Shown here in pieces: positions 30,774-52,675 of a stretch of DNA of 64,000 nucleotides (position 1 is the first letter of the stretch; each line of letters opens with the position of its first letter). Made by a program: the position numbers and the translations under genes. The stretch is taken from positions 1-64,000 of the IMG/VR virus record IMGVR_UViG_3300028592_000004; one strand, 5' to 3'. A model generated the notes under the pieces. The model saw only the letters and a program-made list of their open reading frames with translations, ran no database searches and had not been told where the DNA came from.

Positions 30774-30781
30774 GCTGTCCT

Positions 30782-32688: not shown

Positions 32689-32696
32689 GATCCCTC

Positions 32697-33272: not shown

Positions 33273-33323
33273 GTGTACGAGGGCCGCGGGAGATCCCGCG
33301 GCCAGGTTCCTTTCTTGTAGCTA

Positions 33324-34105: not shown

Positions 34106-34580
34106 CAGGGTCAGCAGCTCCGGAACCGTCTCCTGGCTCAGGGTCTTGCCGTTGAACAGAATCGGTCTCAGTCTCCTTCTGGGCCGGAATCCCGGCGGTG
34201 TTGATCATCACGTACGGCATCCCTCCAGGAAGAAGGGGCCAGGTCTCACGCTCAGACATGAACGCGGCGTAGCCGAGGGCCATGCCCAAGCACAGCAGCC
34301 CTTCGGCCTGGATGTGGAACCCCGTCCACATGACTCCATCCTTGCGAGTGACGAGGTTGAGGAAGCTCCATCCTTCCTTGAATTGATCCGGGAGCTGGTC
34401 GAGCATCGCGATCACGTTTTTGCGTTGCTCCTCCAGCCTCTCGGGATGAAACGCGAGCCTGTGAACTGGCCCGATGACAACCTTGGCCCACTCCGGAGCC
34501 GTGACACCGTCGATCAAGTCCTTCCTATCAAGCAGGCACGCCAATGCGACTGCGTCAACGTTCTCCCCTGTGAGCTCCAT
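34041..34580 (-). CDS. Conserved-looking phage hypothetical protein
   Basis: FHPERL...GWSFL...WTG-x-H...LPGGMPY. Confidence 0.6.
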   Translation of the reverse strand: MELTGENVDAVALACLLDRKDLIDGVTAPEWAKVVIGPVHRLAFHPERLEEQRKNVIAMLDQLPDQFKEGWSFLNLVTRKDGVMWTGFHIQAEGLLCLGMALGYAAFMSERETWPLLPGGMPYVMINTAGIPAQKETETDSVQRQDPEPGDGSGAADPGGEGATEPGVHAGQPSNSGAT

Positions 34581-34581
34581 G

Positions 34582-34926
34582 TCACCTGTCCTTTGCTTGG
34601 TTGTAGGCCGCGGCAAACTCCGCCAAGGAGTACGGCGTGGCCCGCTTTCCTTCCTCGATTGCGTCGGCGATCTGCTTTCTAACCGTCTTGCGGTCAGTCG
34701 CTTCCAGATCCTTGACGACCTGGTCCAGATCGTTACCGACAATGCCTCCACTCTCATGCTCGACAATCAGTGTTCGGTCAACGCCCGGCAGATTGACGAC
34801 ATGAAGCTGGACTCCGTGCTTGTACTTCTTCGGGCGTCCGAGACTGACCTCGATCGAAATCGGGGTATGCGGACTGCCGAACAGGAACGGCCGATATGCG
34901 GCGGTGTAGATCTTACGTTTGGCCAC
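34582..34926 (-). CDS. Hypothetical protein
   Basis: AAGGA before GTG. Confidence 0.55.
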   Translation of the reverse strand: MAKRKIYTAAYRPFLFGSPHTPISIEVSLGRPKKYKHGVQLHVVNLPGVDRTLIVEHESGGIVGNDLDQVVKDLEATDRKTVRKQIADAIEEGKRATPYSLAEFAAAYNQAKDR

Positions 34927-35299
34927 GGCGCTTTCCTTTCTTGCGAGCTTTCACGCGCTCCTGGATGTGGGCTTCGATGAACTCTTCACGGCTCGCGTAG
35001 ACGGGCGCGTTCATGTCCATCGCTTCGTAGTCCCACCCAGTTCGAGCGAAGATACGGGCCATCTGGCCCAGGTTCTCCTCCTTGAGCTGGAGGATCAGAT
35101 GACCAGCACAATGCTGCGCGGTCGGCGGCGGGGCAAAGACTTTCGGCACGTCGCCTTCATCGTTGTCCACGGTCTTGTGACACGGGAACACCCCATCCAT
35201 GTGAGCCACGATCTCCCGCGCTCGGCCCAGTGTCAGGAAGACGGGAATGTCGCTCCTGAACGGGCACTGCGAGCACGGACTCTTCAGATCGGTGCGCAT
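34913..35299 (-). CDS. Cys/His metal-binding phage protein
   Basis: PCSQCPFR...FPCHKT...HCAG. Confidence 0.65.
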   Translation of the reverse strand: MRTDLKSPCSQCPFRSDIPVFLTLGRAREIVAHMDGVFPCHKTVDNDEGDVPKVFAPPPTAQHCAGHLILQLKEENLGQMARIFARTGWDYEAMDMNAPVYASREEFIEAHIQERVKARKKGKRRGQT

Positions 35300-35820
35300 C
35301 AGAGACCCACGATCTTCAAGATCTCGATCGTCCGGTTGATCTGCGTGTAGAAAGTCGTATCACCCTTCGCCCACTGCCACTGACGTGCAGGATAAACAGG
35401 CAGCGGTCGGGGTTGACCGAGGATCTCCGCCAAAGACAAACCTTCGCCAAATCTCCTGACGACTGTCCTCACCCGATTACGAGTTTCGCGATCGAGTAGC
35501 TCCGGAATGTTGTCTGCGCAGGCGATCGCGTGTCGCAAATCACCGCCGCGAAGCGAGTCGACCATATCGAGAAGCCATCTCTCAGAAGGCAGCGTCGAAG
35601 ACCAGGCGTTGAAGTCGATAGGTAGTGACGCGGGATCACATCGCCTGTAGAGCATTGCTCCCGCCAAGCAGACATGGCACTTTCCATCGCTGCCGCTTGA
35701 GAGGAAGGTTCGCATGTTGACAACGACATCGGGCAGATCCTCGATCCGCTGCAAGTCGTCCCGAGCTGCTTCAAGCCAGCCCGACATTGATCTCTGCTCG
35801 TTCGCAAACTTCGGTTTCAT
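35299..35820 (-). CDS. CxxCLAG-family protein, copy F
   Basis: SMSGWLEAARDDL, CHVCLAGA, MVDSLRGG. Confidence 0.75.
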   Translation of the reverse strand: MKPKFANEQRSMSGWLEAARDDLQRIEDLPDVVVNMRTFLSSGSDGKCHVCLAGAMLYRRCDPASLPIDFNAWSSTLPSERWLLDMVDSLRGGDLRHAIACADNIPELLDRETRNRVRTVVRRFGEGLSLAEILGQPRPLPVYPARQWQWAKGDTTFYTQINRTIEILKIVGL

Positions 35821-35830
35821 GTTCTCTCCA

Positions 35831-35850
35831 TTCAATCCGCGGGTATTGAA
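35831..35850. promoter_or_regulatory. 20-bp site, copy 5
   Basis: TTCAATCCGCGGGTATTGAA, intergenic, directly upstream of GGAG RBS. Confidence 0.85.
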
Positions 35851-35861
35851 ACGCCCGCAGA

Positions 35862-36110
35862 TCAGTCACCCAGTTTCTGCTGCCAATCGTCGTCAACGTC
35901 TGGCGGTTCGGCCTCTACATTTCGACGGGCCGCGTCAAGCATGTCGATAGCAACAGAGTCCGGTGCGTTCGTCGACAGATAGCTGAAGCCGGATTCCGTA
36001 TGCAGCACGATCGTCATCAACAGAACGCTCGGATGTTTTCGGGTAAGCGCGTCGGTCAGCTCACGCGCGACGTTCTGAAGTTCTTCCCTTATAGCCTCTT
36101 CGTCTGCCAT
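35862..36110 (-). CDS. Small hypothetical protein
   Basis: MADEEAIREEL... Confidence 0.55.
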   Translation of the reverse strand: MADEEAIREELQNVARELTDALTRKHPSVLLMTIVLHTESGFSYLSTNAPDSVAIDMLDAARRNVEAEPPDVDDDWQQKLGD

Positions 36111-36120
36111 GAGTTTCCCC

Positions 36121-36152
36121 AAAAGCACCGGCCCAGTTTCCCGGGCCGGTGC
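36121..36152 (-). terminator. Intrinsic terminator
   Basis: GCACCGGCCC / GGGCCGGTGC stem followed by TTTT on minus strand. Confidence 0.7.
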
Positions 36153-36189
36153 GAACTCATCTAGTTAAGGTCTTACGACCTACTCAGAA

Positions 36190-36378
36190 CTAACGGTCGC
36201 TGTCGGCATCGCCGGCCGCGGGCGGATCGGACTGCTCGGCGCCGGCCTCGGTGGGCTCGCCCGGCGTCGGTTCATCGGCGCTGGCCTCTTCAACGGGCAG
36301 TTTGCTCTCGTCAGCAACGGCCACGCCGCCCTCATCCCGACGACCCCGATACCCGTGACGCGGTTCATTTCCACACAT
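36190..36378 (-). CDS. 62-aa acidic, probably disordered peptide
   Basis: GAGGAG before ATG; E/D/P/A-rich tail. Confidence 0.5.
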   Translation of the reverse strand: MCGNEPRHGYRGRRDEGGVAVADESKLPVEEASADEPTPGEPTEAGAEQSDPPAAGDADSDR

Positions 36379-36433
36379 GGCGAACTCCTCAGAAACGTTT
36401 TGGCTCCTCTCGAAATGAGAGGTCGGCCCAGCA

Positions 36434-36456
36434 GAGCACCGGAACATCCGGTGCTC
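36434..36456. other. Perfect 10-bp hairpin
   Basis: GAGCACCGGA-ACA-TCCGGTGCTC, no U-tract. Confidence 0.6.
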
Positions 36457-36844
36457 ACTCGTCATTGAGACAGTGGCACATGCGTCCAGCAGGAGTTTCA
36501 TCTCCGCAATGAACGCAGAAGTCATGCCTGAGCTGTCCCATCACCTCTTCCCGCTGGAGAGCAGGGAGTGATCGCAAATGAGCGAAGAACTGCGCGGGGA
36601 CGCCCGCGGACAGCTCTTCAAAGGTCGGCATCTTCGGTCCAATGGCTGACGGGGCCATGTGGAAGAGCCATTTCTCGCCGGTCCAGAAATTGAAGAAGTC
36701 GACGGTGATCCAGGCCAGGTGGTCCTGCTGCCAGATCTTGCAGGTATACCACCCCGGTTCTGTTGGGTCCTGGATGTCACCGCTTCCAAGCTCCGGATCC
36801 TTAGTCGGAATCTTCGGGTCGCTCTGCGCTTTTGACCGCGGCAT
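36455..36844 (-). CDS. Hypothetical protein with C-terminal zinc ribbon
   Basis: FCVHCG...CHC. Confidence 0.55.
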   Translation of the reverse strand: MPRSKAQSDPKIPTKDPELGSGDIQDPTEPGWYTCKIWQQDHLAWITVDFFNFWTGEKWLFHMAPSAIGPKMPTFEELSAGVPAQFFAHLRSLPALQREEVMGQLRHDFCVHCGDETPAGRMCHCLNDE

Positions 36845-37001
36845 CAACTTCCTTCCTGGCCTGTTCGGCACGGTTGTAGGTGTTCGAGAGCTGCTTGACG
36901 CCTTCGGCGATGGCAGGATGGCCGAGCACACGCAGATTGGCCTCAACATCTGCGAAGCCCTCCACCGTCTCCGAGGCTGTTTGTTTACGCGGTTTGGTCA
37001 T
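36801..37001 (-). CDS. Small helical protein
   Basis: MTKPRKQTASE... Confidence 0.5.
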   Translation of the reverse strand: MTKPRKQTASETVEGFADVEANLRVLGHPAIAEGVKQLSNTYNRAEQARKEVDAAVKSAERPEDSD

Positions 37002-37140
37002 GGCTCTTTCGAGGCAAGAGAACGGAGGGCCTAGCGGCCAACTCACCACACGGCAGGTGACGCCTCTGGACGGCCAAGTGTGGGGTAGGGCTGGCCGCAC
37101 CGTCCCTGGATGGGGAATGTGCCGCGGTGCCCTGCTCGGC

Positions 37141-37365
37141 CTATACGGTGACCGGAACCGTTCGCGCGATCCTTCGACCCTCGCGATCGATCCGGTAGTT
37201 CTTGACATGGCAAGCCGCACAGAGGTGCAGCTTGGCCTTTCGATAAATGTCCCACTTCGAGCGCCTAGCCTCCTGTACAGCTGTACTGAAGTTGCGCGCT
37301 TCGAAGCTACGAACGGCTCCGCAAATGGTGCAGACGAGCTTCAAAACGGTCGTTTGGCGGTCCAA
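37141..37365 (-). CDS. Zinc-ribbon protein
   Basis: CTICG ... CAAC; AGGAGG before TTG. Confidence 0.6.
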   Translation of the reverse strand: MDRQTTVLKLVCTICGAVRSFEARNFSTAVQEARRSKWDIYRKAKLHLCAACHVKNYRIDREGRRIARTVPVTV

Positions 37366-37482
37366 AGTGGCCTCCTAGGGCGTTGAGAAAGTTGCCCACG
37401 TGGTCTCCAAAATCCGGTTTCATTTGTCAACAAGACCGGTTTTGGGCGATTTTCCTGGAACTATTTCGATTTTCTGTCCGAG

Positions 37483-38301
37483 TTACGGTCGACTGAGACG
37501 CGCAATCACAGGCACCTTCCAGAGCCACGGAGAGGGATGCTGGAAGGTGTCGGTCGTCGCGACCGTGTCGTACATACTCAGCGCGTCGAGGCCTTTGGAG
37601 AAGATTCCGTGGGCCACAAACAGGGCTGTTGATCTGGCGCCGGCGAGCCGCGGATGAAGCATCTTGAAGGTTGCTCCACCATCGCAGATGTCGTCCACAA
37701 CGAGGACGTGCAGACCAGTGGCATCAACAGGCTTGTCGTCAACGCCGCGGATCTCCTTGTAGACGAGAGATCCGGTCGACGGATCTCGCGACTTCTCGCC
37801 GTACCAGACGTGAAAAGAGGGAACACGAACCGCCGCTTCCTGCTGACTGCGAAGGAAGGCTCCCTTATCCGGCAACAGGATGACCGTATCTTCGCTTGGC
37901 CAGCCCAGGCGCTGCAGGAGAGTGTCGACCTCGGGCCACATCGAAACGTTCTCAAGATTGTCGATCTCAGCGAACGCTGCCGCACTGTGGGCCTCGTAGG
38001 TACGCACGCGGGAGTAACCGAGCTCGTTGATCAGCCGGCCGAACACGCGTAGCGAGAACGGCGACAGCTTCTCAGGGTCAGTCACACGATCCTGCCGGCC
38101 GTACGGTAGATAAGGGAGAACGAGAGTCCTCGGCTGCATACCGTTCCGCTTGAGGACGTCTGTCGCAAGGAGCAGATTCATCAGCGCGGAACTGGATCGA
38201 ATGTCGGCCAGGAGAAACCCGTCGTTCTCCATGCCGGCTTGCAGCACAACATGCTGCTCCCCGGCGGAGAAGGTCAGCGTCTTAAAACTGGACAGAAGCA
38301 T
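37483..38301 (-). CDS. prs: PRPP synthetase-like protein (possible Adps of NARP1)
   Basis: FSAGEQHV, LPYLPYGRQDR, EAHS, LPDKGA, VVDDICDGGATF, AHGIFSKG. Confidence 0.85.
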   Translation of the reverse strand: MLLSSFKTLTFSAGEQHVVLQAGMENDGFLLADIRSSSALMNLLLATDVLKRNGMQPRTLVLPYLPYGRQDRVTDPEKLSPFSLRVFGRLINELGYSRVRTYEAHSAAAFAEIDNLENVSMWPEVDTLLQRLGWPSEDTVILLPDKGAFLRSQQEAAVRVPSFHVWYGEKSRDPSTGSLVYKEIRGVDDKPVDATGLHVLVVDDICDGGATFKMLHPRLAGARSTALFVAHGIFSKGLDALSMYDTVATTDTFQHPSPWLWKVPVIARLSRP

Positions 38302-39685
38302 GGAAGTTCCTTCGCACTTCGTCGAACGTGTAGCGCCGCAGGATCTGCCCGTTTCGGAAAACAGGCATGAGTTCGCTGGGCGCGTCGGGCGGTGCCGAGT
38401 CGTAGGTGACCCCGGCGCGGAGAGCGACCCGGCCAACATGGCTCTTCTTGCCAGAGTCGGTGATCGGGTCCTTGAAGATGTTGACGTTGCGACCGTTCCG
38501 CGTGATCTGCGTGGCCTTGATCGCCATCCCCAGAGTGTCCCGCGTGCCGGCCCGGAGCAGACCACCAGCTCCGATGACGATATTCGATCCGTCGTACCCA
38601 GAGCCGACAGAGCGAATCAGCGTCTCCTCGTACCGCTGATGGTACATCCCGTCCCCGTAGATCAGCCCGATCTTCGGATTCAAGATACGGTACGGACTGT
38701 CGGCCAGCCGCTCGCTGCCGAACAACTCGTCCAACAGGACCAGCACACCCTTGGCCTCCGGCGTACCTGGCTCAGCCTTGGCATCACCGCAGATGATGTC
38801 CGGCGGGTAACCGCTATCGGGACGGATGATGACCCGACCGTTACGGGCAAGGATCTTGTCCTTCAGCCGCGGCAGAATGTTCGTACAGACGTGCCAGATC
38901 GAGTAGGTGTCCGAGACGATGGAAACGTAGCCGTCCGGATACAACTCCAGCATCCGCTCGAACGCCTCGAACTCGAACTCGCGACCGTAGGAGCACATGA
39001 CAGAGTGCTCGGAGGCGGGCACAGACATCATGCACGGCGATTCCGTTGGGAGGCTGTAGTACTCCTCAATGAACGGCTCGGCCACGATCGTGTCGCTGCC
39101 GCGGAACACGATGAGATGCGCTGCGCCGGAGATTGCCGCTGACTCCTCAGACGTGTCGCTCCGGTAGCCGAAGTCGTGCACGTTGAATTCCAGAGGCTGT
39201 CGCGAGTAGCGACGAGCGATTCGGTAATACTCCAGACTGTTTGTCGCGACGGTGCAGGGATACCACACCTTCAGCAGCAACGATTCCAGAAAGCCCGGCG
39301 CCCACGGGAAGTCGTCGTGCGTCGACTCCAGCGTGAGCAGGGCATTCTTCACCGGCAGGACGGTGCCCTCAGGCACGGCGCTGATCTCGACAGGCCACTG
39401 ACCGAGGTCAGCGATGCCGTGGAGCTTCTCCTTGATGTCGTCGCTCGGCTCGGACCCGAGGATCCGCCGACGCCGCTTGAGGAAGTCCTCGACGTTGGCC
39501 GTCGTGATGGGCTGAGTCAAGTACTCCATCAGGTAGTACTGCAAGCCGAAGAACAGGAGCTCCTCGAAGTACTTGTCGCTTCGGGCGTTCAGATACGAAA
39601 TCACCCGGGTGGTCCCGGGTGCGTACTGTTCCATGTGGCCCATCTTGTAGACGTCAGTCCGCAGAAGCGGGTGAACTAGCTTCAT
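38282..39685 (-). CDS. nadV: Nicotinamide phosphoribosyltransferase-like protein (possible Namat of NARP1)
   Basis: TDVYKMGH-x-x-QY, HDFGYR, ASEHSVM, SIVSDTY, IIRPDSG, IYGDG, KDPITD-x-GK-x-S. Confidence 0.92.
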   Translation of the reverse strand: MKLVHPLLRTDVYKMGHMEQYAPGTTRVISYLNARSDKYFEELLFFGLQYYLMEYLTQPITTANVEDFLKRRRRILGSEPSDDIKEKLHGIADLGQWPVEISAVPEGTVLPVKNALLTLESTHDDFPWAPGFLESLLLKVWYPCTVATNSLEYYRIARRYSRQPLEFNVHDFGYRSDTSEESAAISGAAHLIVFRGSDTIVAEPFIEEYYSLPTESPCMMSVPASEHSVMCSYGREFEFEAFERMLELYPDGYVSIVSDTYSIWHVCTNILPRLKDKILARNGRVIIRPDSGYPPDIICGDAKAEPGTPEAKGVLVLLDELFGSERLADSPYRILNPKIGLIYGDGMYHQRYEETLIRSVGSGYDGSNIVIGAGGLLRAGTRDTLGMAIKATQITRNGRNVNIFKDPITDSGKKSHVGRVALRAGVTYDSAPPDAPSELMPVFRNGQILRRYTFDEVRRNFHASVQF

Positions 39686-39694
39686 GACTCGCTT

Positions 39695-40087
39695 TCATTC
39701 GATGTCGATGCCTCGCACGTTTGTTGGCGAGGCTGGTGGAGGAGGTGATTCAGGCGACAACATAGCCTGACGCTGCAGAAAGTCGAGCAAGGCGACAGCC
39801 TGAGAACGTGTCACAGGTTTCATCGCCGTCAGCTGCTCAGTGCCGCGAACCCAGACCTCGAACTTCACGGGGTCTGTTTCGATGATGAGGTTGAGTCGGC
39901 CGAAGCGGAGTGAAAAGCCAGAAGCCGACTGCGAATGCTTCGGTCCTGGATCCTGGTCAGCGAAGACAGCCAACGCATTCGCCTGCGGACCAGTCATCAG
40001 CAGAACAAGATCGACATCGGAGTTGGGCTTTGGCGATCCGTAGACGCGACTCCCTGTCAGGATAGCGTTCGGCCGCAGGTCAGGCAC
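39695..40087 (-). CDS. Minimal nucleotidyltransferase (MNT)-like protein
   Basis: ILTGSRVYG...SDVDLVLL. Confidence 0.7.
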   Translation of the reverse strand: MPDLRPNAILTGSRVYGSPKPNSDVDLVLLMTGPQANALAVFADQDPGPKHSQSASGFSLRFGRLNLIIETDPVKFEVWVRGTEQLTAMKPVTRSQAVALLDFLQRQAMLSPESPPPPASPTNVRGIDIE

Positions 40088-40496
40088 CGGTCTTGAACCG
40101 CCCCGGCCAGAAGATCTCAAGCTCGCGAGCCGCCGCTTCGGGGCTATCGCTCGTGTGGGACACCGAGAACGGCAACCTCCGCATGAAGTCCCCGCGGATG
40201 GTGCCCGGCTCCGGGTCCACAGTAGAACCCTGCATTGCTCGGGCTTTCTCGATCGCGTTCTCTCCGGAGATGACCACTGCGATCATCTCCAAGTCCGCGG
40301 TGACGTCGATCAACCGCTCGAAGAAGTCCTTTGACTTATGCTCTTCGTACAGCTTCTCGATCTTGCCGTAGTTCGGCGTAATCATCTCCACATGGAGAAT
40401 ATCGAACCGACGCTCAAGCCGGGCCAAGATCGTCCCTGCCAGCTCTCGCTTCAGGGCGTGGTTCTTGATGAGAAAGAGGGTGACTTGCTGCGACAT
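40080..40496 (-). CDS. ndk: Nucleoside diphosphate kinase (divergent)
   Basis: TLFLIK, HKSKDFF, PGTIRGDF, HTSDSPEAAAREL. Confidence 0.85.
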   Translation of the reverse strand: MSQQVTLFLIKNHALKRELAGTILARLERRFDILHVEMITPNYGKIEKLYEEHKSKDFFERLIDVTADLEMIAVVISGENAIEKARAMQGSTVDPEPGTIRGDFMRRLPFSVSHTSDSPEAAARELEIFWPGRFKTGA

Positions 40497-40771
40497 TTGG
40501 AAACCGTGCTCCTCGGTGAGAGGTCTGCGGACAGACCCAGGGCGGAAAGAACGACGCCAAGAAGTCGACGCTGAGCCAGGCGTCGATATCGACCGTAAAT
40601 CGCAACCCAGTTGATAGGCCCGTGGGTGCGGCCGGCGGCGTCTGACAGAAACGACGGAAGATCACGCCAGGTGACTGGCATGGTGACGTAGTAGTGGAGA
40701 GCGAGGGCCACGCACTTCGAGCTCACGACGGGCTTGCGCCCGCAAGTGATCTCGCCTTTCGCCTCAGCCAA
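40451..40771 (-). CDS. Hypothetical basic protein
   Basis: TTG start overlapping upstream stop; uncertain. Confidence 0.4.
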   Translation of the reverse strand: MAEAKGEITCGRKPVVSSKCVALALHYYVTMPVTWRDLPSFLSDAAGRTHGPINWVAIYGRYRRLAQRRLLGVVLSALGLSADLSPRSTVSKCRSKSPSFSSRTTP

Positions 40772-41108
40772 AGCAGTCGCCGCGAGGGCGAGCTGCCTTC
40801 GGTTCGGCGGGACCCATGCTGAGGAATTGCTCGAACCAGTGCCAGCACGACAGATCAATTTCCGACTTGTGCTGCTCGATCGACCTGCGGACATACTGGA
40901 AGTTCCCGACGTACTTTTGGTGGCCAATGCCGAACCCGTACACGCCGAGATTGAGCGATTGTGAGCCCAGGTCGTCGTCCGTCAGGCGAAGCACAGCCTG
41001 CGTGAGAACGACCTGGCGACCGTCCGACATCGTGCGGACGAAAGAAGGCTCCTCGAACATGTCGACGATTTCGACCTGTCGGGGAGGATCGTAAAGATTC
41101 AGCATCAA
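40764..41108 (-). CDS. Hypothetical protein
   Basis: Overlap with upstream stop. Confidence 0.55.
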   Translation of the reverse strand: MMLNLYDPPRQVEIVDMFEEPSFVRTMSDGRQVVLTQAVLRLTDDDLGSQSLNLGVYGFGIGHQKYVGNFQYVRRSIEQHKSEIDLSCWHWFEQFLSMGPAEPKAARPRGDCFG

Positions 41109-41332
41109 CGCATCCAGTGGGACTTGGTCATATCCCAGCCCCCTGTCGGCACCGGTGCGATCGTCGCCTGAGGCGCCTGTGCGTTGACCCCGGGAGGAGC
41201 CATCGGCGACATCGGCTTCTGCGGCATGGCAAGGGGCTTGGGCAGAGCGCTGGGTGGCTGCGGAAGCGGAGGCTTGCCGAGACCCATGCCCATCTTCTCC
41301 AGTGCCTTCATGGCAATTTTGACGCGGTCCAT
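41105..41332 (-). CDS. Small Pro-rich protein
   Basis: KPPLPQPPSALPKPLAMPQKPMSPMAPP. Confidence 0.45.
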   Translation of the reverse strand: MDRVKIAMKALEKMGMGLGKPPLPQPPSALPKPLAMPQKPMSPMAPPGVNAQAPQATIAPVPTGGWDMTKSHWMR

Positions 41333-41362
41333 CGCTTAGGTCTCAATCGAGGTCAAGGTGCC

Positions 41363-41686
41363 TCAGTGTGTGATCTGGATCGCCCGGAAGTCCGCGCTGG
41401 TTGAGCGTGCGGGCGGGTTCCCCGCCAGTTCGCCCGTCACCGGAATCACGTCGCGATCCTGCATCTGCAGCTCTTCCTCCGGCTTCTGGATCAGGACCTG
41501 ACGGCCGTCCTGGAGCAGGAGGGAGTTGTACCCCGCATGATACCCGTTCCCGGTCACGGGATTTCGCGCGAGCCGCTCGTTCGAGAAGTTCACGAACTCT
41601 CGCAGCGCGGAGGAGACCGCTTCGGGTAGTGATCGGCCGGCCGAAAACTCGTCCAGCGCATGCTCGTAGATCGTCTTCACATCCAT
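41363..41686 (-). CDS. Hypothetical protein
   Basis: MDVKTIYEHALDEF... Confidence 0.55.
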   Translation of the reverse strand: MDVKTIYEHALDEFSAGRSLPEAVSSALREFVNFSNERLARNPVTGNGYHAGYNSLLLQDGRQVLIQKPEEELQMQDRDVIPVTGELAGNPPARSTSADFRAIQITH

Positions 41687-41692
41687 CGGTGT

Positions 41693-42100
41693 TCATTCCG
41701 TGTCTATGTATCGGGCTTCAGATGGAGTCTGTTGAACGGCCTCATGATACGTGACCGTCAACTCTTCCGACAACGGAATTGCCTGGTCGTACCTCTCGGC
41801 CAGGCGGAACGTCCAGTCCAACTGGGCAAAGCGATTGACCCGTTCCGTGATCAGCAGCCGGCAGCGAACCGGACTCGACAGCAGAACGGAGAGTTCACCG
41901 TCTTTGGCCGAACAGGTGTTGACGGTGCCTTCCAGATCGTGAATCGAACACCGGACATCAAAGAGGCGATCCAAAGCGAACTGGATCATCAACAACAGCT
42001 GTGAGCTGGCGATGTCGTGGGTGTTGATGTCCCACAGCGACTGCCGGATGGCTTCAATCGTCCAGGCGCACTTACGACTCAGTCCCGGGAAGAGGCTCAT
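41693..42100 (-). CDS. Hypothetical protein
   Basis: ATGA overlap. Confidence 0.55.
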   Translation of the reverse strand: MSLFPGLSRKCAWTIEAIRQSLWDINTHDIASSQLLLMIQFALDRLFDVRCSIHDLEGTVNTCSAKDGELSVLLSSPVRCRLLITERVNRFAQLDWTFRLAERYDQAIPLSEELTVTYHEAVQQTPSEARYIDTE

Positions 42101-42723
42101 TTGCGGCGAGGGGTCCGGGCCAGATCAAGCGGGCGTCCTGCCTCCTCGAACAGCCGGTCAATCTCTTTCACTTCACTGCGAAAGAATGGACTTTGACACA
42201 GGGGATCCTCAAACGCAGCCAGAAGATCCCGACAGTCTTCCACCCACACTCGCACAGCTTCGCCGTGGTCTTTGTAGGTGAACGGTGTGAATCCGATCGT
42301 GAGATCGGCCGCGGCGCGGAGCTCAGCCAGCTTGGCGAGTTTCTCAGGCTCCTCGGCAGTGACGATGGCGGAGCGGAGAGCTTGATGGCGCCTGGCGGTG
42401 CCGATGCGAGGATCAGGCGAAAGCATGCAGACGGCCCGAGCGATCGAAAGCTCGCTCATGTCGCAGACCTCTTCGAAGGTCATGCCGTAGTGCTGAACAC
42501 AGTAGATCATGCGGGAGGCACAGCGAATGACCGCGACGTAGATCTGGATGTCATCCAGGGTCGGGTCGGCCCACTCGCGGGCATAGCGATCGGCGATGTC
42601 TCCGATCGCTTCTGGGTCCGCAATGGTCGGATCCTTTCGGCGAGCAAGCAAGTAGACATGCTGCCGATTGACCTGATCCATGAGCGCGTCCAAGTCAATG
42701 GACGGAGAGAACTGCAGTGACAT
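42097..42723 (-). CDS. Degenerate Mesh1/SpoT-like HD-domain protein
   Basis: RRKDP, MTFEEV, ARAV-x-x-LS-x-D, KLAKLAE align with Mesh1, but LHD-x-x-ED is MIY-x-x-QH. Confidence 0.6.
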   Translation of the reverse strand: MSLQFSPSIDLDALMDQVNRQHVYLLARRKDPTIADPEAIGDIADRYAREWADPTLDDIQIYVAVIRCASRMIYCVQHYGMTFEEVCDMSELSIARAVCMLSPDPRIGTARRHQALRSAIVTAEEPEKLAKLAELRAAADLTIGFTPFTYKDHGEAVRVWVEDCRDLLAAFEDPLCQSPFFRSEVKEIDRLFEEAGRPLDLARTPRRK

Positions 42724-42741
42724 CCCTGCCTCGCGTGAGGA

Positions 42742-43104
42742 CTACTTACCCGAGTTGCCGGAGAACCGGCCACCCTTCTGATCCTTGTCCTTCTTGTCCT
42801 CTCGCGACTGCTGGCCCTTACCGCCCTTCTGGGCCTGGGCAGTCGCCTTCGGGGGCTCCGCGGCCTTCTCAGCCGGAGCGCTGGCAACCACCTGAGGAGC
42901 CGGCGTGCTGGTCACCGGCGGGTCGACAACCGCTGGCACCGGAGCAGGGGACGCAGCGACCGGTGCAACGACCGTTTCGGCAGTTGCTGCAGGTTTGGAA
43001 GTGACAGGCTCGGGAGCGGGCTGGGTTGTTGCCGACCGCGGCCGAGCCCGATCCACCAGTTTGCCCTGTTGCCGAAGACGTTCGCGGTAGTCGATCTGAC
43101 TCAT
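42742..43104 (-). CDS. Pro/Ala/Thr/Val-rich low-complexity protein
   Basis: TTQPAPEPVTSKPAATAETVVAPVAASPAPVPAVVDPPVTSTPAP. Confidence 0.6.
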   Translation of the reverse strand: MSQIDYRERLRQQGKLVDRARPRSATTQPAPEPVTSKPAATAETVVAPVAASPAPVPAVVDPPVTSTPAPQVVASAPAEKAAEPPKATAQAQKGGKGQQSREDKKDKDQKGGRFSGNSGK

Positions 43105-43116
43105 TCTCGGAATCCA

Positions 43117-45333
43117 TTACGAGTTAAGTCCGTAGTGCCAGCGGATTTCTTTCTGCCAATCTGAGCCGTACTTCGCACGGAAGACGTCTCTGGCAGCCGC
43201 GGCATCACAAATCTGGTGATGAGCGATCTGGTCGCCCCTTTGACCGTCCAAGTATACCCGACGCGAGCGATAATGGAACACGAAGCACCGGTCTGTCAAT
43301 AGAACCCGGAATCCGTCATCCCGAGCCCGCTTCTGAAGTTCGTGGCCTGCGCCAAATCCACTCAGTGGAAAGTCCTCGTCCAGGAGGCCCACGCGATCAA
43401 ACACAGACCGGGAAACCATCATGGCCTCAGTCGAAACGACGGGGCATTCTTCAGTCGTCACGCCAGCTTCGTAGTGGTGGATATCACCGAAATGTCCACG
43501 GTTCTGCAACTCCTGAGCGTTCGACACAGCGGCGATGATTCCATCCGCAGGCTGCGGGTGGTCATGAGCGACGACAGCCATCTCGTGAAAGAAGCCTGCG
43601 CTCAGAGCCACGTCATTGTGCAGCAGCAGAAAACGGTCGTATGCCGGATTCGGCATAACCGATTCCAGAGCCATGTTGACTGCCTTCGACCAGCCGATGT
43701 TCTTGCCCGGCACCAGTACAGTCTCGTCAGCAACAGCGTGGTAGTCCCCACTGTTGTCGACCACCACGACCGGTAACCCGGCGTCCCGCGCCTTATGCAC
43801 GAGCCCGGTCGTCATGTCGTGATACTTGAAGGTGACGATGATCACGACAATTCGGCCTGCTGTCTTCTCCGCTGGGTCGAGCCACTGGTCGTCCAGCCGT
43901 TTGAGCATTCGCCTCAGCGACTGACGACGGACATTGAGGCGGTGCCCCATGTCCCGCTCAACCTGATGATTGTCGAGAGCGACGTGGTTGCAGTGGCCGA
44001 CCACAACCGTCTTTGCATGCTTGGAGAGTACGCGAAGCTCGCGGCCCCGGACGTGCCCCAGCCGGTACATGAGCTCGTACTTGTCGTTGTTGCCAAAGCT
44101 GATGTCCTCCCGGAATTGCTCCTTCGTCAACCCGCGGAAAGCAAGCATGCACTCCGTGGCCGGCGACAGCACGTGACCTGACTGCGATGTGCGCTGACAA
44201 GGGATCGAGTAGTAGCGGCGGCTCTGATGCTGCTCACAACCCTGCCGGAACGCCTCCCACTGCCGATCGGTGAAGAACGTGTCACCATCGAAGACGACTG
44301 TCACCTGAGCCACGAGCGAGCCGTACCAGATCCCGAGGTTGCGAGCCCGGTTGATCTGGATGGCCCGCACGACCTTCTGTGCGGTCGACTTGGCCTTGCG
44401 GTAGGCGTGAGGAGAGAACGGCAGTTCCATCCAATGCCGCTGGTACTTCTCCAGCAGCTCGATGTACTTTGCGCGAAGCTCCTCGTTGTGGAGCGAGTTC
44501 ACGATGTAGATCTCGTGACAGTCCTCTTGAGCCGGCATCTGGAGAATGTGCTCCAGCGTGGCTAGCCGTGAGCCCGCGTTGTCCCGCGGCGGCAGCTCGT
44601 TGCCGACGATCCGCACGACGCAGAACGAGAACTTACGGAGCACCTCTTTGCCAGGCAGCTCCACCTTGTGATTTCGGGATCCACGGCGCCGAATCGTGAC
44701 GAACTGATTCGGCGGTCCGTGGTGGATGAACCCGGGTCCCAGAACGTGGCCCTTCACCTTGTGCTTCCACAAGACATAGGGCAGGCTGATCTGGTCCCGG
44801 TAGGAACCACGGGCGATCTCTTTCCACCAGGAGGCCAAGATCGGAGCCGCGGCGCGATCGGCGATCAGAACGCCTGTCTCGAAGTGGTCTCCCTTGTCAG
44901 GGAACCCTTCCTTGCGATACCGGCGGAGTTGGCGGTTCTGAATACCGCTCTTGTCCCACCCGTCACGGTTGATGCAGTCGACCTCCTGGGCCACAGAGTG
45001 AACCAGGGGCCGGCGGAAGGCCGCAATCGGCCCGTGGAGCTTCATGTCCCGAAAGACCGCCAGATCCATCTTGGCGATCAGGTTCGAGTCCATCCAGACG
45101 ACGCGTTTCGCCCTCGGGAAGAGCCTCAGGATGTGGGTCTTGTGCCACCGGGCGGTCCGGCGGGACGGCAGCGCCACGTCGATCGTAGGGACCGCAATCC
45201 AGCCTTTCCGTCCCATTCGCTCACGAACCGTAGGATCGGAGCAGAAAGCAATGCACGGGTATTGAACAGACGGCACCCGTGGAATGACATCGGTCGCCCC
45301 GATCATCGCCGTGACAAAGACCAAGTCGTCCAT
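43117..45333 (-). CDS. Three-domain glycosyltransferase (DUF616/TOD1-MUCI70-like, GT-A-like, GT2-like)
   Basis: RWHK...VVWMDSN...RDQISLPYVLW; VVFDGD; VVVVDNSG...NIGWSKAVN...LLLHND...FDRVGLLDEDF. Confidence 0.75.
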   Translation of the reverse strand: MDDLVFVTAMIGATDVIPRVPSVQYPCIAFCSDPTVRERMGRKGWIAVPTIDVALPSRRTARWHKTHILRLFPRAKRVVWMDSNLIAKMDLAVFRDMKLHGPIAAFRRPLVHSVAQEVDCINRDGWDKSGIQNRQLRRYRKEGFPDKGDHFETGVLIADRAAAPILASWWKEIARGSYRDQISLPYVLWKHKVKGHVLGPGFIHHGPPNQFVTIRRRGSRNHKVELPGKEVLRKFSFCVVRIVGNELPPRDNAGSRLATLEHILQMPAQEDCHEIYIVNSLHNEELRAKYIELLEKYQRHWMELPFSPHAYRKAKSTAQKVVRAIQINRARNLGIWYGSLVAQVTVVFDGDTFFTDRQWEAFRQGCEQHQSRRYYSIPCQRTSQSGHVLSPATECMLAFRGLTKEQFREDISFGNNDKYELMYRLGHVRGRELRVLSKHAKTVVVGHCNHVALDNHQVERDMGHRLNVRRQSLRRMLKRLDDQWLDPAEKTAGRIVVIIVTFKYHDMTTGLVHKARDAGLPVVVVDNSGDYHAVADETVLVPGKNIGWSKAVNMALESVMPNPAYDRFLLLHNDVALSAGFFHEMAVVAHDHPQPADGIIAAVSNAQELQNRGHFGDIHHYEAGVTTEECPVVSTEAMMVSRSVFDRVGLLDEDFPLSGFGAGHELQKRARDDGFRVLLTDRCFVFHYRSRRVYLDGQRGDQIAHHQICDAAAARDVFRAKYGSDWQKEIRWHYGLNS
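45247..45266. promoter_or_regulatory. Variant of 20-bp site inside 5' end of GT gene
   Basis: AGCAATGCACGGGTATTGAA. Confidence 0.4.
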
Positions 45334-45336
45334 GAC

Positions 45337-46140
45337 TTACCAAGTTGTACGCGTCCTGGGAACGTTGCCACCGATCGCGGTCGGGGTCTCCGTGAACTCC
45401 GCAACATACGCTGGCCGGAGCAGGGATTCCAGACCGAGAAGAATCGCAGCCTGGATGATGTTGGGTGCCCAGGTCGCTCTACGCCAGGAAACATGCCCAG
45501 GCGTGAACATGTAGTAGAGGGTGGCACGCTGCTGCGTCGTCTTCAGCGGCCTGGCGCCGTGAATCATCGTCTCAGTGAAAGCGATGATGTCGCCCTGTTC
45601 CAGCCGCGGAGCAACGAGAGCACCGTCAGCCACGGGATAGCCATCCTCAAAGACATGCTTTCGGACAGCACCACCCTGCATAGCGAAGGCACTCTTGTGA
45701 GAGCCCGGAAGGAGCACCAGGCCACCCTCGTCACCACCTTGTGCGTGAAGTGGGATCCCGACAGAGACCTGCGTACAGAAGGGCGATCCGTTCTGGTTGA
45801 AGAACAGATGGGTTCCTTGGGCGGCGCCTGGACCGCCATGAAGATTGCTGACTTCGACCCCGTTGCTGTCTGGCTGCAGTCGAATGAAAGCGTGGTCCAA
45901 GCGAAATCCGCTGCCCAGGACCTTTTCAAGCAACTTCATCAAGTTGATGCTCTTCAGCAAGCGAAGCCCGCCGTACGGAGTGACGTCAAGGAAGGGCACC
46001 TTGACCGACTTGGCTTCCTTGATTCGGGCCTCAAGACCCACCCGAACCTCCTCAACCCAGTCCGCCGGCAGCAACTTGCTAAAGTGGACAAAGCCGAGGG
46101 AGTCGAACAGATACTCTTCACGACTCGGAACATAGCTCAT
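45337..46140 (-). CDS. PhyH-like 2OG-Fe(II) oxygenase, copy 1
   Basis: RLDH, LHGG, GGLVLLPGSHKS, GDIIAFTETMIHG. Confidence 0.8.
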   Translation of the reverse strand: MSYVPSREEYLFDSLGFVHFSKLLPADWVEEVRVGLEARIKEAKSVKVPFLDVTPYGGLRLLKSINLMKLLEKVLGSGFRLDHAFIRLQPDSNGVEVSNLHGGPGAAQGTHLFFNQNGSPFCTQVSVGIPLHAQGGDEGGLVLLPGSHKSAFAMQGGAVRKHVFEDGYPVADGALVAPRLEQGDIIAFTETMIHGARPLKTTQQRATLYYMFTPGHVSWRRATWAPNIIQAAILLGLESLLRPAYVAEFTETPTAIGGNVPRTRTTW

Positions 46141-46913
46141 GTGGGAGGCCTTCTTTCATTGCCGATCGGCATCGGCTTTCCGGGGGAATCATCGAACCGA
46201 CCAGACCACGGCAGAGCAATGAGGCGTCTCTCCTCATCGTTCCTCGGATAAGATCCGTATCGATTCTGTTGTTGGATCGGATCGCGCCAGGCAATGAAGC
46301 CGGGAGCGAACTTGTAGTACAAGACACGGCGCTCTGAGGCGCCAATTTTCAACCCGCGATCGCCATGCACCAGGCTCTCGCTGAAGACAACAACGTCGCC
46401 CTCAAACAGATCCGGCGTATAGGTCGCTTCGGCCATAGTGTCGAACACCTCGGCCATCAGCTTGTGGCCGTCTGCGTCGTACCGCGACTTGTGAGAGCCC
46501 GGGATGAAGCAAAACCCGCCATCGTCTTTGAGCTGACCCCGGAGTGTGACACCGATCGTCAACTGGCTGTAGAGCACGCGCTCGCCGACGCCGGTGATGA
46601 AACAGGTGCTCTGGGAGGAGAGCGGGCCGCCGTGGAGATTCGGCTTTGAGGAGTTGCTGGAGAGCCCGACTGCGTGATCCAGCCGATAGCGATCGCCGCA
46701 CAGCGTGCGACAGATGTCACGAATCGCTGGCAGCGCCATGATGTCCCAGAACACAGCCCCAAGATCCAGGATCGGGAACCGGTGCGGGAGAGTTTCACCG
46801 AAGCGGGACACGATAGCGGCATTGGCCTTCTGCGTCAGGTCGGCCGAGATCGCATTTCGAACAACGGTGCAGCCAACCGAGTCGAGGATGTAGTTTTGAG
46901 CTTTTGTCAGCAC
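46137..46913 (-). CDS. PhyH-like 2OG-Fe(II) oxygenase, copy 2
   Basis: RLDH, LHGG, GGFCFIPGSHKS, GDVVVFSESLVHG. Confidence 0.8.
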   Translation of the reverse strand: MLTKAQNYILDSVGCTVVRNAISADLTQKANAAIVSRFGETLPHRFPILDLGAVFWDIMALPAIRDICRTLCGDRYRLDHAVGLSSNSSKPNLHGGPLSSQSTCFITGVGERVLYSQLTIGVTLRGQLKDDGGFCFIPGSHKSRYDADGHKLMAEVFDTMAEATYTPDLFEGDVVVFSESLVHGDRGLKIGASERRVLYYKFAPGFIAWRDPIQQQNRYGSYPRNDEERRLIALPWSGRFDDSPGKPMPIGNERRPPT

Positions 46914-47974
46914 AGGGGTTCCCTTTCGGAAAGCAGATCGAGCCAGCGCTTCTTGAAAAGCTGTTCGGATTTGACGGCCGTCGCGCCACACCCATTCTGC
47001 AGGTGATTCAAGACGCGCACGTTGTTGGAAAGGAGCATGACCGAATCGGCAACAAGTTGCGGGTCCACCTTCACAGTCGGAATGTGGCCGCAGTTATCTT
47101 TGAGGCGACCCTCAAACAGGATCCCGTCTTCACCATCGGTTAGCAGCTGATTGATCGGCGGGTTGTTCGGCGCTACAACGGGCGTACCGCTTCGTACCGA
47201 GAGGTACGGCATGAGACCAAAGATCTCTTGAGCCACCGGGAACACCGTCACGTCGTGAGCAGCCAGGGCCAGCAGCTGATCCGTATACGAAGCAAACCGG
47301 ACCAGATCCAGTCGGCCGCGGACCTGACGCGACATCCGCTTGAGCAGGACATCCGCCCCGGAGGACAAACGACCGTGCAAGATCGTCAGGCCCACTCGTG
47401 GATTCTCCAGAAGCGAATTGCAGACGTCGAAGAACGACTGGTCGACGAACTCAGTCTGAGAGTACGTCAGAGGGATCAGCACCCGAAACAGGGACAGATC
47501 CTTCTTGGGCAGCTTTCGCTGTTGTGGCCGCGGTGGAGCCCAAGGGACATGGAAGGGGCTGCCGTAGTCATAGCGGCGTCGCAGGACCATCTTCGCTGCA
47601 GCGTTCGGCGCGACAACGAAGTCGAACTTCTTCAGCAGATCCTTCCAGTTCCCAGCGTCCTCATGCCACTGATAAACGAAGATCGTCCGAATCTTCTGCC
47701 GCTTAACCCACTCAACTTGAGCGATGGCGTGGGTGGGATCGTCATCTGGCAAGTTGGCCCAGATAACGACTTCCTGCTTGCGAGCCCACTCAGCAAAGCG
47801 AAGGCGTTTGTGATTGAAAACACTCTTGTCCCACTCCGGTCGCACGACAGGGATTTGTCGCAGCGACGTATGGAACGTGACAGTCATGCCGCGCTGATAG
47901 AGGAAGTCGGCAAGCGCGAGCACGGCCAGAGTTGAGTCCTGACGCTGGTAACGCAAGCAGATTCCAACATTCAC
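46907..47974 (-). CDS. GT-B (GT4-like) glycosyltransferase
   Basis: DFVVAPN; HDVTVFP...EIFGL...LSVRSGTPVV...LLTDGEDGILF. Confidence 0.75.
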   Translation of the reverse strand: MNVGICLRYQRQDSTLAVLALADFLYQRGMTVTFHTSLRQIPVVRPEWDKSVFNHKRLRFAEWARKQEVVIWANLPDDDPTHAIAQVEWVKRQKIRTIFVYQWHEDAGNWKDLLKKFDFVVAPNAAAKMVLRRRYDYGSPFHVPWAPPRPQQRKLPKKDLSLFRVLIPLTYSQTEFVDQSFFDVCNSLLENPRVGLTILHGRLSSGADVLLKRMSRQVRGRLDLVRFASYTDQLLALAAHDVTVFPVAQEIFGLMPYLSVRSGTPVVAPNNPPINQLLTDGEDGILFEGRLKDNCGHIPTVKVDPQLVADSVMLLSNNVRVLNHLQNGCGATAVKSEQLFKKRWLDLLSEREPLC

Positions 47975-48750
47975 TTTCCGCCTCCGAGAACGGTCAGACA
48001 CTTTGAGCGGTGCATGATTCGAACCGGACCATCGCCAAAGTGGAAGAACCGACTCTCGGCCTCAATCTTAGGGAGCATCTCGCGAATTGAGGAGCGGCTA
48101 GGCGCCTTTGTTCGCACGTTGGCCCATAGTCGGTCGTGATCCCAGGTGTTTTGACCGTGACAAACACGCATGTACAGCCAGGGTTTTCCCTTAACCCAGG
48201 AGAGGCTGTCAAGGTCGATCCCGTCGCGAATGACGGAATCCTCGCCAATCCGTTGCTCGGGATAGAGGAGCGGAAGGGGGACCCGGTGGATGATCGTGCC
48301 CGGAATGAACTTCTTCCGGTAGTCGCGAACGATCACCGAATCCCAGGAAACAACATGCAGCTCGCGATCCGCAGGAAACCAGTAAAGCTGAGACGTCAGG
48401 AACGAGGCGGTGATCGACGGCCCATGCGTCGCCAGCTGCGTGAACAACCGGTTCGGATGCGACTGGTCATCATCGTCCCACTGGACTGCGAGCGGCGTCT
48501 GGACGGCGTTGACGGCGATCTGCCTCAGGAAGCCCAACGTTTGCTTCTCCGAGTGGATGATTCTCACCTTCAACCCGTAGCCGTCGCAGAGCTTCAGCAG
48601 CAGATCCTGGTCACGAGGCGTGAAGTCGTCTTCGACAACGATGAGCTGACTAACGCGATGAGTCTGGCGACTCAAGCTGGCCAAGCTCCATTGAACCATC
48701 GGCAGGCGGGAAGCCTGCGTGACCATGAGCGCGGTGATTGCTTGCGACAT
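47971..48750 (-). CDS. GT2-family glycosyltransferase
   Basis: SLSRQT, LIVVEDD, TLG-x-LRQIAV, QWDDDDQSHPNRL. Confidence 0.8.
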   Translation of the reverse strand: MSQAITALMVTQASRLPMVQWSLASLSRQTHRVSQLIVVEDDFTPRDQDLLLKLCDGYGLKVRIIHSEKQTLGFLRQIAVNAVQTPLAVQWDDDDQSHPNRLFTQLATHGPSITASFLTSQLYWFPADRELHVVSWDSVIVRDYRKKFIPGTIIHRVPLPLLYPEQRIGEDSVIRDGIDLDSLSWVKGKPWLYMRVCHGQNTWDHDRLWANVRTKAPSRSSIREMLPKIEAESRFFHFGDGPVRIMHRSKCLTVLGGGK

Positions 48751-49441
48751 CTCGACCCTCATCGAATAGGAGACCTCGACGGCCCCATTGAATGCTAGGG
48801 ATCTTGTGTCGTCCGAGGGTGCTCCACTCATTTCCAGTGTGATCCACAAGGCTGGGAACGTGGACCAGGATAGGAAGTCGAAGCTCGACACGGAACACGT
48901 TCCCGACGAGAACGTCCACCTTGCGGTGGCTGTCGTGCTTCTGGAAGCGAGGGTGAGCCAGCAGGGCGTTGGCGGATTCTCGCGGCATGCAGATGGCCAG
49001 GGCGCCCACGAACGCGTTGTCGTGGAACGTCGCTTCCTGCCAATGATCAGGCTCACGAACCTTTTCCCGCTGGTAATGCGGGACCATCTTCGGGCTCGTG
49101 TAAGGCGACAGGAAGCCCACGGTCGGATGCGGAGAGAACGCATCCTTGAGGATGTCCGCCGCTCCGGGACGCCAGACATGGTCGTCCTGAAGCATCAGGA
49201 TCCAGCTGGCATTCGTATGCGTCAGAAGATGGTGCACACCGCGCTTCCAGTTCGGAAAGCACCCGAGCGGATGATCCGAAGGAAGCCATTCGCAGCTGTC
49301 CACGAGCTGAGGCCGCTCCATCGGTTCAGCGAAGACGTGGATCGTCTCGCTGAAGCCGGCCTCACGGATACTGCGAAGCGTCTTGAGAAGGAGAGACCGC
49401 GGACGAAACGCGGTCTGGATTCCAATCGCGAGCGACTGCAT
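48650..49441 (-). CDS. GT-A-fold glycosyltransferase-like protein
   Basis: LGCFPNW, WILMLQDD, PSLVDHTG-x-x-WST. Confidence 0.65.
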   Translation of the reverse strand: MQSLAIGIQTAFRPRSLLLKTLRSIREAGFSETIHVFAEPMERPQLVDSCEWLPSDHPLGCFPNWKRGVHHLLTHTNASWILMLQDDHVWRPGAADILKDAFSPHPTVGFLSPYTSPKMVPHYQREKVREPDHWQEATFHDNAFVGALAICMPRESANALLAHPRFQKHDSHRKVDVLVGNVFRVELRLPILVHVPSLVDHTGNEWSTLGRHKIPSIQWGRRGLLFDEGRDVASNHRAHGHAGFPPADGSMELGQLESPDSSR

Positions 49442-49445
49442 GGTC

Positions 49446-51434: not shown

Positions 51435-51457
51435 CGTCGATCCTTCGACTTCGCGGA

Positions 51458-51477
51458 TTCAATGCCCGCGGATTGAA
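51458..51477. promoter_or_regulatory. 20-bp site, copy 6 (inverted spacer)
   Basis: TTCAATGCCCGCGGATTGAA, 23 nt upstream of portal ATG. Confidence 0.8.
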
Positions 51478-52627: not shown

Positions 52628-52675
52628 GTGAATCCTTTCCTTGGGACGCCGGCATCATAGCCAGAGGCAATAGCT

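What the first reader, a model, noticed from the sequence alone, without database searches (positions are those of the whole stretch)
42097..42723. Catalytically dead Mesh1/SpoT-type hydrolase: candidate alarmone sponge
Seen: RRKDP...SRMIYCVQHYGMTFEEV...IARAVCMLSPD...KLAKLAE. Known (recalled human MESH1): RRKDP...PYINHP...ALLHDTVEDTDTTLDEV...VRRLVEEVTDD...KLVKLAD. Spacing and hydrophobic pattern match, but the first His, the HD dyad, the ED pair and the KLAD Asp are all replaced while the frame is intact. Inference: a pseudo-enzyme that binds (p)ppGpp/(p)ppApp or NADPH without hydrolysis, or interacts with toxSAS/CapRel-type defence enzymes.
Basis: partly seen in the sequence, partly recalled or inferred. 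Interest (0 to 1): 0.65.

Follow-up and report, generated by a model that had tools for sequence, protein, structure and literature searches.

The report
Phage alarmone-hydrolase fold without its metal site
A soil jumbo phage carries a well-conserved protein with the fold of a MESH1/SpoT-type small alarmone hydrolase, in which all four metal-binding residues and the catalytic acid pair are replaced; it most likely binds something rather than hydrolysing it, but what it binds is not known.

The parts
42097..42723 (-). SAH/MESH1-fold gene (208 aa, P0001) with a dismantled metal site
42616..42618 (-). Codon of D36, at the position of MESH1 metal ligand H35
   Evidence: GAC on the minus strand. 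Alignment. Family at this position: D27, E7, H7.
42502..42507 (-). Codons of I73-Y74, at the position of the signature HD dyad (MESH1 H61-D62)
   Evidence: ATC TAC on the minus strand. Family: V26/I13/H4 and Y43/E4.
42490..42495 (-). Codons of Q77-H78, at the position of the catalytic E65-D66 pair
   Evidence: CAG CAC on the minus strand. Family position 77: E25/D12/Q3. Position 78 is variable.
42322..42324 (-). Codon of E134 in KLAE, at the position of MESH1 metal ligand D122 (KLAD)
   Evidence: GAG on the minus strand. Family: E44/D6.
42742..43104 (-). Upstream 120-aa low-complexity (Pro/Ala-rich, basic C-terminus) protein with an N-terminal QIDYRERLR motif; its stop lies 18 nt before the SAH-like start
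   Evidence: The motif is invariant in the window, L004, L006 and L007. Related YR.RLR or YR.QLA N-termini occur in L017 and L018. It is absent upstream in L008, L010, L014 and L015.
41693..42100 (-). 135-aa ORF whose ATG overlaps the SAH-like stop (ATGA); lineage-specific, with no homologue in related loci
   Evidence: No Pfam, PHROG or PADLOC hit.
41363..41686 (-). Conserved ~104-aa neighbour (107 aa here): a small alpha/beta domain plus a disordered tail, of unknown fold
49446..51434 (-). Portal protein (662 aa), which anchors the conserved synteny
   Evidence: tblastn to the annotated portal of Salmonella phage Arash, E 5e-57. Weak phrog_64 match. 43-53% identical orthologues lie upstream of the SAH-like gene in L004, L008, L010, L017 and L018.
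43117..49179 (-). Variable glycosyltransferase / PhyH-dioxygenase block between the portal and the cassette
   Evidence: Pfam and PHROG hits. GT content varies from 0 to 4 genes among related loci.

Best explanation
The gene encodes a stand-alone pseudo-hydrolase (or at least non-canonical member) of the small-alarmone-hydrolase (MESH1/SpoT HD_4) fold. It belongs to a family found so far only in uncultured, mostly soil, large phages. In most of that family the H..HD..D Mn2+ site has been rebuilt as D/E..(V/I)Y..E, and the rebuilt site has been kept under purifying selection. Shown: the fold, the homology, the substitutions, their conservation, a single split from relatives that keep the histidines, and a fixed genomic position just downstream of the portal gene, together with a small Arg-motif low-complexity protein and a ~104-aa protein. 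Inferred: it no longer performs Mn2+-dependent 3'-pyrophosphohydrolysis. It most likely works by binding, using the still-conserved former active-site cleft (R28, D36, Y74, Y79-G80, D104, R106, R112, K131, E134). My sub-estimates: not a canonical hydrolase, 0.85. Acts by binding rather than catalysis, about 0.55-0.6. The thing bound belongs to host alarmone/RSH-type signalling or immunity (a nucleotide with Mg2+, or an RSH/toxSAS enzyme), about 0.25-0.3. The overall confidence given is for 'non-catalytic binder on an SAH scaffold'.
Against: No ligand or partner was demonstrated. The complex prediction with the conserved 107-aa neighbour gave no verdict. The retained carboxylates (D/E36, E/D77 in 37/53 members, D104, E134) could form a Mg2+ site, so residual or altered catalysis is not excluded. 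The phosphate-contacting residues Y32 and N126 are not conserved, so binding of the ancestral ligands in the ancestral pose is unlikely. The phage has no RelA_SpoT or second HD_4 gene. The gene's context is portal-proximal rather than an anti-defence island, apart from an NAD-salvage-like cluster 2-5 kb away. No RNA evidence of expression was available.
Confidence: 0.55

Rival explanations
1. It is still an enzyme. The H/HD/D site was converted into an all-carboxylate (D36, E/D77, E134, possibly D104) Mg2+ site with new Tyr residues, giving a phosphohydrolase with changed metal preference and substrate.
For: Acidic residues are conserved at positions 36, 77, 104 and 134. Carboxylates next to a phosphate-binding cleft are most easily explained by metal binding. 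The basic residues R28, R106, R112 and K131 are conserved. The whole motif framework HD1-HD5 is retained.
Against: Two of the four ligand positions are now hydrophobic or aromatic (V/I73, Y74). The second residue of the ED pair is variable across the family. In the target and its closest relatives the first is Q, and MESH1 E65A is inactive. Even the His-keeping clade lacks the ED pair.
Confidence: 0.22
2. It is a morphogenesis or virion-associated protein of the portal-proximal module, possibly packaged and injected. The acidic former active-site cleft would bind the Arg-rich YR.RLR motif of the adjacent low-complexity protein, and the function would have no link to alarmones. This is a special case of 'binder', so it overlaps with the best explanation.
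For: The position just downstream of the portal is fixed across loci that share only 25-45% identity. The motif protein co-occurs in 6 of 8 substituted-clade loci with enough upstream sequence, and in 0 of 2 His-clade loci. The genes are tightly spaced or overlapping.
Against: The motif protein is missing in L014 and L015, although these have the substituted site. There is no virion proteomics. The co-occurrence counts are phylogenetically non-independent.
Confidence: 0.2
3. One reading: it is a stoichiometric sponge for (p)ppGpp, (p)ppApp or NADPH. This is also a special case of 'binder'.
For: The SAH fold is retained, with a conserved cleft and a base-stacking-region Arg (R28). Q at the E65 position resembles substrate-trap mutants. 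Sponges are an established phage strategy (PMC13728456).
Against: The metal, Y32, D66 and N126, which hold the phosphate in MESH1, are all gone. The cleft is acidic. Alarmones accumulate to very high concentrations (general knowledge). No sponge-like fold or oligomer evidence was found. The phage-side context does not point to anti-defence.
Confidence: 0.12

Closest known systems
Metazoan MESH1 / HDDC3 (PDB 5vxa, 3nr1, 3nqw)
   Different: All four metal ligands, the E65/D66 pair, and Y32/N126 are replaced. The protein has about 30 extra residues, including a longer C-terminal helix and a basic tail. It comes from a phage.
Bacterial and phage small alarmone hydrolases (RelH 7qod, Pa-SAH 6yvc, Lmo0812, ATfaRel, phage PVP-SE1 and SSU5 SAHs)
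   Different: Those enzymes keep H..HD..ED..D and act catalytically. This family fails the Pfam HD_4 model and lacks the catalytic set.
Pseudo-hydrolase domain of RelA-type long RSHs
   Same: An HD_4-fold domain that lost its hydrolase residues yet is conserved and serves a non-catalytic (regulatory) role. This is the precedent for a 'dead' alarmone hydrolase (PMC12226406 text; 10.1101/670703).
   Different: RelA's pseudo-HD is fused to a synthetase and ribosome-binding domains. This protein stands alone, and the phage has no RelA_SpoT domain.
HD-alarmone PDEases of jumbo phages (Iyer et al. 2021, PMC7824862)
   Same: An HD-superfamily alarmone-hydrolase homologue carried by jumbo phages.
   Different: Those were described as predicted active enzymes. 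I did not compare sequences with them directly. The present family has no relative in the 50,697 deposited phage genomes by tblastn.

Membership tests
Small alarmone hydrolase / Pfam HD_4 (PF13328), RSH superfamily | All-helical HD_4 fold spanning the whole protein | tested here: met
Small alarmone hydrolase / Pfam HD_4 (PF13328), RSH superfamily | Significant sequence match to the family | tested here: inconclusive
   The family profile hits MESH1 at E 1e-10. The protein alone gives no Pfam hit at E<=1 and no PDB hit. HD_4 is not among the families listed for any of the 53 members, and PF13328 finds nothing in the phage.
Small alarmone hydrolase / Pfam HD_4 (PF13328), RSH superfamily | H...HD...D metal-ligand set | tested here: not met
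   D36, I73-Y74 and E134 stand in place of H35, H61-D62 and D122.
Small alarmone hydrolase / Pfam HD_4 (PF13328), RSH superfamily | Catalytic ED pair after the HD motif | tested here: not met
   Q77-H78 in the target. The family has E/D at the first position in 37/53 members, and the second position is variable.
Small alarmone hydrolase / Pfam HD_4 (PF13328), RSH superfamily | Mn2+-dependent 3'-pyrophosphohydrolase activity | not testable with these tools
   Needs biochemistry.
Type IV SAH antitoxin of toxSAS modules (ATfaRel-like) | Encoded next to a toxSAS (RelA_SpoT-domain) gene | tested here: not met
   No PF04607 match anywhere in the 229-kb genome at E<=1. The neighbours are unrelated.
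RelA-type pseudo-hydrolase domain | HD_4 fold with lost catalytic residues, fused N-terminally to a SYNTH domain | tested here: not met
   The loss of catalytic residues is met. The fusion is not: this is a 208-aa single-domain protein.
Phage nucleotide sponges (Tad1/Tad2/Acb2-type) | High-affinity non-hydrolytic binding of an immune nucleotide | not testable with these tools
No known sponge appears among the structural matches.

The most novel reading that the evidence does not exclude
A clade of soil jumbo phages has turned an alarmone hydrolase into a non-enzymatic counter-measure. It would be a stand-alone pseudo-SAH, possibly delivered with or expressed alongside the head/portal module, that blocks host RSH/toxSAS-type signalling by trapping its product or by clamping the synthetase in trans, much as the hydrolase domain restrains the synthetase domain inside long RSH enzymes.
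Probability: 0.2. Interest if true: 0.8.

Novelty: new variant of a known kind. Interest (0 to 1): 0.56.

Why it matters
Active alarmone hydrolases are a known phage answer to stringent-response and toxSAS immunity. The only well-known 'dead' version is the domain built into RelA. A free-standing family that has swapped out the entire metal site, is under purifying selection and sits at a fixed place in phage genomes would be the first pseudo-enzyme branch of the SAH group. It gives a clean natural experiment: sister clades with and without the histidines, in the same genomic slot. That lets one ask what an alarmone-hydrolase scaffold can do without chemistry. If it does act on alarmone signalling, it would add a non-catalytic mode to phage counter-defence. 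If it does not, it shows the HD_4 fold recruited to phage morphogenesis.

Tried and rejected
1. Single-sequence searches of P0001 gave nothing: Pfam, NCBIfam, PADLOC, PDB phmmer, the word-index protein search, tblastn against 50,697 phage genomes, and ESM Atlas feature search. Only phrog_11147 gave a weak hit (E 1e-3).
2. The search for related loci with the full alignment failed because no stretch was conserved enough. With a tighter alignment it found one viral locus, two short metagenome loci and none in the genome collection. The genome scan used a single narrow pattern, so it is weak evidence for absence from bacteria.
3. The translationally coupled 135-aa ORF as a partner: rejected, because it is not conserved in any related locus.
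4. Complex prediction of the SAH-like protein with the conserved 107-aa neighbour gave no verdict (score 0.00). This is not evidence either way.
6. The profile word search for named relatives returned only family members labelled 'hypothetical protein'.
7. A link to the MuF/Apk2 toxin-immunity arrangement or to an aRES/NARP1 phosphatase was considered and dropped. The phage has no RelA_SpoT domain, and the NARP1-associated phosphatase is a Macro-domain protein.
8. Cultured relatives: the portal has only distant matches (Arash and Vibrio phages, 26-29% identity), with no synteny beyond the portal.
9. Expression: no RNA run holds the locus. Read laying was not used, because contigs cannot show expression.
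10. Mapping conservation onto the model's coordinates was not possible, because coordinates are not exported.

Full report
**What is there.** Its codon-position GC pattern matches the surrounding minus-strand genes. A GAGG motif lies a few bases before the ATG, the upstream gene ends 18 nt before it, and its TGA overlaps the ATG of the next ORF. The window is the first 64 kb of a 229,210-bp virus record that CheckV rates complete. The same contig and locus occur in several soil metagenome runs, and no RNA run holds it.

**Is the MESH1 resemblance real?** The protein alone is invisible to Pfam (even at E<=1), NCBIfam, PADLOC, a phmmer search of all PDB chains, the word-indexed protein search and tblastn against deposited phage genomes. 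Only phrog_11147, of unknown function, gave a weak hit. The exhaustive HMMER search found 53 relatives of 185-294 aa, with E from 4e-43 to 7e-4. A profile built from their alignment (A1) hits human MESH1 (5vxa, E 1e-10), HDDC3 (3nr1, 3.8e-10), Drosophila Mesh1 (1.1e-8), Lmo0812 (2.6e-4) and, more weakly, Rel/RelA hydrolase domains.

**The active site.** The MESH1-NADPH paper (10.1101/325266) states that the metal is held by H35, H61, D62 and D122. It also states that the scissile phosphate contacts Y32, residue 66 and N126, that R24/K25 hold the base, and that E65A and D66K abolish activity. In the profile alignment these positions correspond in P0001 to D36, I73, Y74 and E134 (metal ligands), T33, H78 and A138 (phosphate contacts), A27/R28 (base), and Q77/H78 (the ED pair). 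I checked the codons directly in the DNA. The literal 'RRKDP' match is slightly out of register, and only R28 and P32 of it are conserved in the family.

**Decay or maintained variant?** The replacements are themselves conserved across the family. The counts are Y74 in 43/53, E134 in 44/53, V/I73 in 39/53, D/E36 in 34/53 and Y79 in 43/53. H22, A44, G80, A95, D104, R112, L132 and A133 are at least 90% conserved. dN/dS on the closest available pairs is 0.14-0.28. dS is near saturation, so the values are rough, but they are clearly below 1. Five distant members (P0045, P0049, P0052, P0053, P0054) keep H at 36, HE at 73-74 and D at 134, although they too lack the ED pair. They form one clade (SH-aLRT 97), so a single change on the tree accounts for the switch; the root is not determined.

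**Genomic context.** The 662-aa protein at 49446..51434 is the portal. It matches the annotated portal of Salmonella phage Arash by tblastn at E 5e-57 and gives a weak phrog_64 hit. Orthologous portals (43-53% identity) lie upstream of the SAH-like gene in every related locus long enough to show it: L004 (a 226-kb IMG/VR contig), L008, L010-12, L017 and L018. Between the portal and the SAH-like gene there are 0-4 glycosyltransferase or dioxygenase genes.

Immediately upstream in the window, L004, L006, L007, L017 and L018 is a low-complexity Pro/Ala-rich protein. Its only conserved element is an N-terminal Arg-rich motif, QI[GD]YR[DE]RLR or a looser YR.[RQ]L[RA]. It is absent in L014, L015 and the two His-clade loci.

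Downstream, either directly or after one lineage-specific ORF, lies a ~104-aa protein. It is conserved in the window (41363..41686), L003, L010, L013, L015, L017 and L018/19. Its first 70 residues fold confidently but match no known structure. The 135-aa ORF that overlaps the target's stop is not conserved.

The phage has no second HD_4 gene and no RelA_SpoT synthetase. No family member carries a name. One is binned in a Planctomycetes MAG. No relative was found in deposited phage genomes.

**How it most likely works.** Shown: an SAH scaffold whose canonical Mn2+ site, catalytic acids and phosphate-contact layer are gone, while the cleft-lining positions remain conserved and the gene is under purifying selection in a fixed genomic slot. 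Inferred: canonical pyrophosphohydrolysis is lost, and I am fairly confident of that because single mutations at E65 or D66 already cripple MESH1. The protein most likely acts by binding through the remodelled cleft.

What it binds is open. It is weakened by the loss of every residue that holds the phosphate in MESH1, by the carboxylate-rich character of the new cleft, by the very high cellular levels that alarmones reach (general knowledge), and by the lack of any alarmone-related partner in the phage. A protein-level action on host RSH or toxSAS enzymes would be stoichiometrically easier. It has precedents in RelA's pseudo-hydrolase domain, and in the T7 portal inhibiting RelA/SpoT as reported in the review read. 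It is untested.

Two rivals deserve weight. The first is a remodelled all-carboxylate Mg2+ enzyme, since acidic residues are conserved at 36, 77, 104 and 134. The second is a morphogenesis-linked role in which the acidic cleft binds the neighbouring protein's Arg-rich motif. My one complex job went to the 107-aa neighbour and returned no verdict, so the motif-protein pairing remains untested.

**Comparison with known systems and novelty.** Active SAHs in phages, their ability to neutralise toxSAS (PMC7229694) and HD-alarmone PDEases in jumbo phages (PMC7824862) are all known. A catalytically dead HD_4 domain is known inside RelA. Full-text searches found no stand-alone pseudo-SAH. The protein passes the fold test for SAH membership but fails the metal-ligand and ED tests and the Pfam model. 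I therefore file it as a new variant of a known kind, not as an SAH enzyme. Interest is moderate to good for RSH and phage-defence specialists, limited by the absence of any functional evidence.

Noticed in passing
window 37483..39685 (-), plus 39695..40120 and 40080..40496 (-): A PRPP-synthetase-like gene (phrog_619, E 3.5e-54) sits next to a NAMPT-like gene (phrog_448, E 9e-133), followed by a small nucleotidyltransferase-like ORF and a nucleoside diphosphate kinase. A PRPS-like plus NAMPT-like pair is the signature of phage NAD+ reconstitution pathways (NARP1 Adps/Namat, or NAMPT-based salvage). These scans cannot tell which one it is. The cluster lies 2-5 kb from the SAH-like gene.
   Followed up: partly
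window 43117..49179 (-): A block of three glycosyltransferase-like genes (TOD1/MUCI70+GT2-like 738 aa, GT1/4 364 aa, GT2 402 aa) and two PhyH-type dioxygenase-like genes lies between the portal and the cassette. The number of GT genes varies from 0 to 4 among related phages. The adjacent Pro/Ala/Thr-rich protein could be a glycosylation substrate.
   Followed up: partly
window 42742..43104 (-); L004:6922-7920, L006:12-527, L007:675-1655, L017:8666-8971, L018:8681-8941: These are low-complexity proteins of very different lengths (86-332 aa). Their only shared element is a short Arg-rich motif (QI[GD]YR[DE]RLR or YR.[RQ]L[RA]). Some have His/Lys-rich C-terminal repeats (AEHHAKP in L004). Their function is unknown.
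   Followed up: partly
L004:8864-9208, 9872-10363, 10375-11028: Three ORFs in the related jumbo phage end in nearly the same C-terminal peptide (RRRIVDT, RRRIIDT, RVRVIDT). This may reflect a conserved ribosome-binding or start region of the following gene overlapping the reading frame, or it may be a real C-terminal signal. The window's 135-aa ORF ends in RYIDTE.
   Followed up: no
window 57307..58164 (-): A DNA methyltransferase (phrog_67, E 7.9e-55).
   Followed up: no
window 42193..42720 (+): A 175-aa ORF lies antisense to the SAH-like gene. It has similar GC statistics, and weak antisense similarity also appears in L006. This is the expected shadow ORF of a high-GC gene, not a second gene.
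   Followed up: partly
P0057 (NCBI ODU02673.1) and L017:1-786: One family member is deposited in a MAG labelled Planctomycetes bacterium SCN 63-9, on a 5.9-kb contig. A near-identical copy sits on a 35-kb contig that carries a phage integrase. This may hint at the host, and suggests that some relatives are temperate or smaller phages.
   Followed up: no
window 1..64000: There are no tRNA genes in the window. Almost all long ORFs between 37 kb and 63 kb are on the minus strand with very short or overlapping junctions, which suggests long polycistronic units. Promoter- and terminator-like sites around the target are no more frequent than in shuffled sequence.
   Followed up: partly
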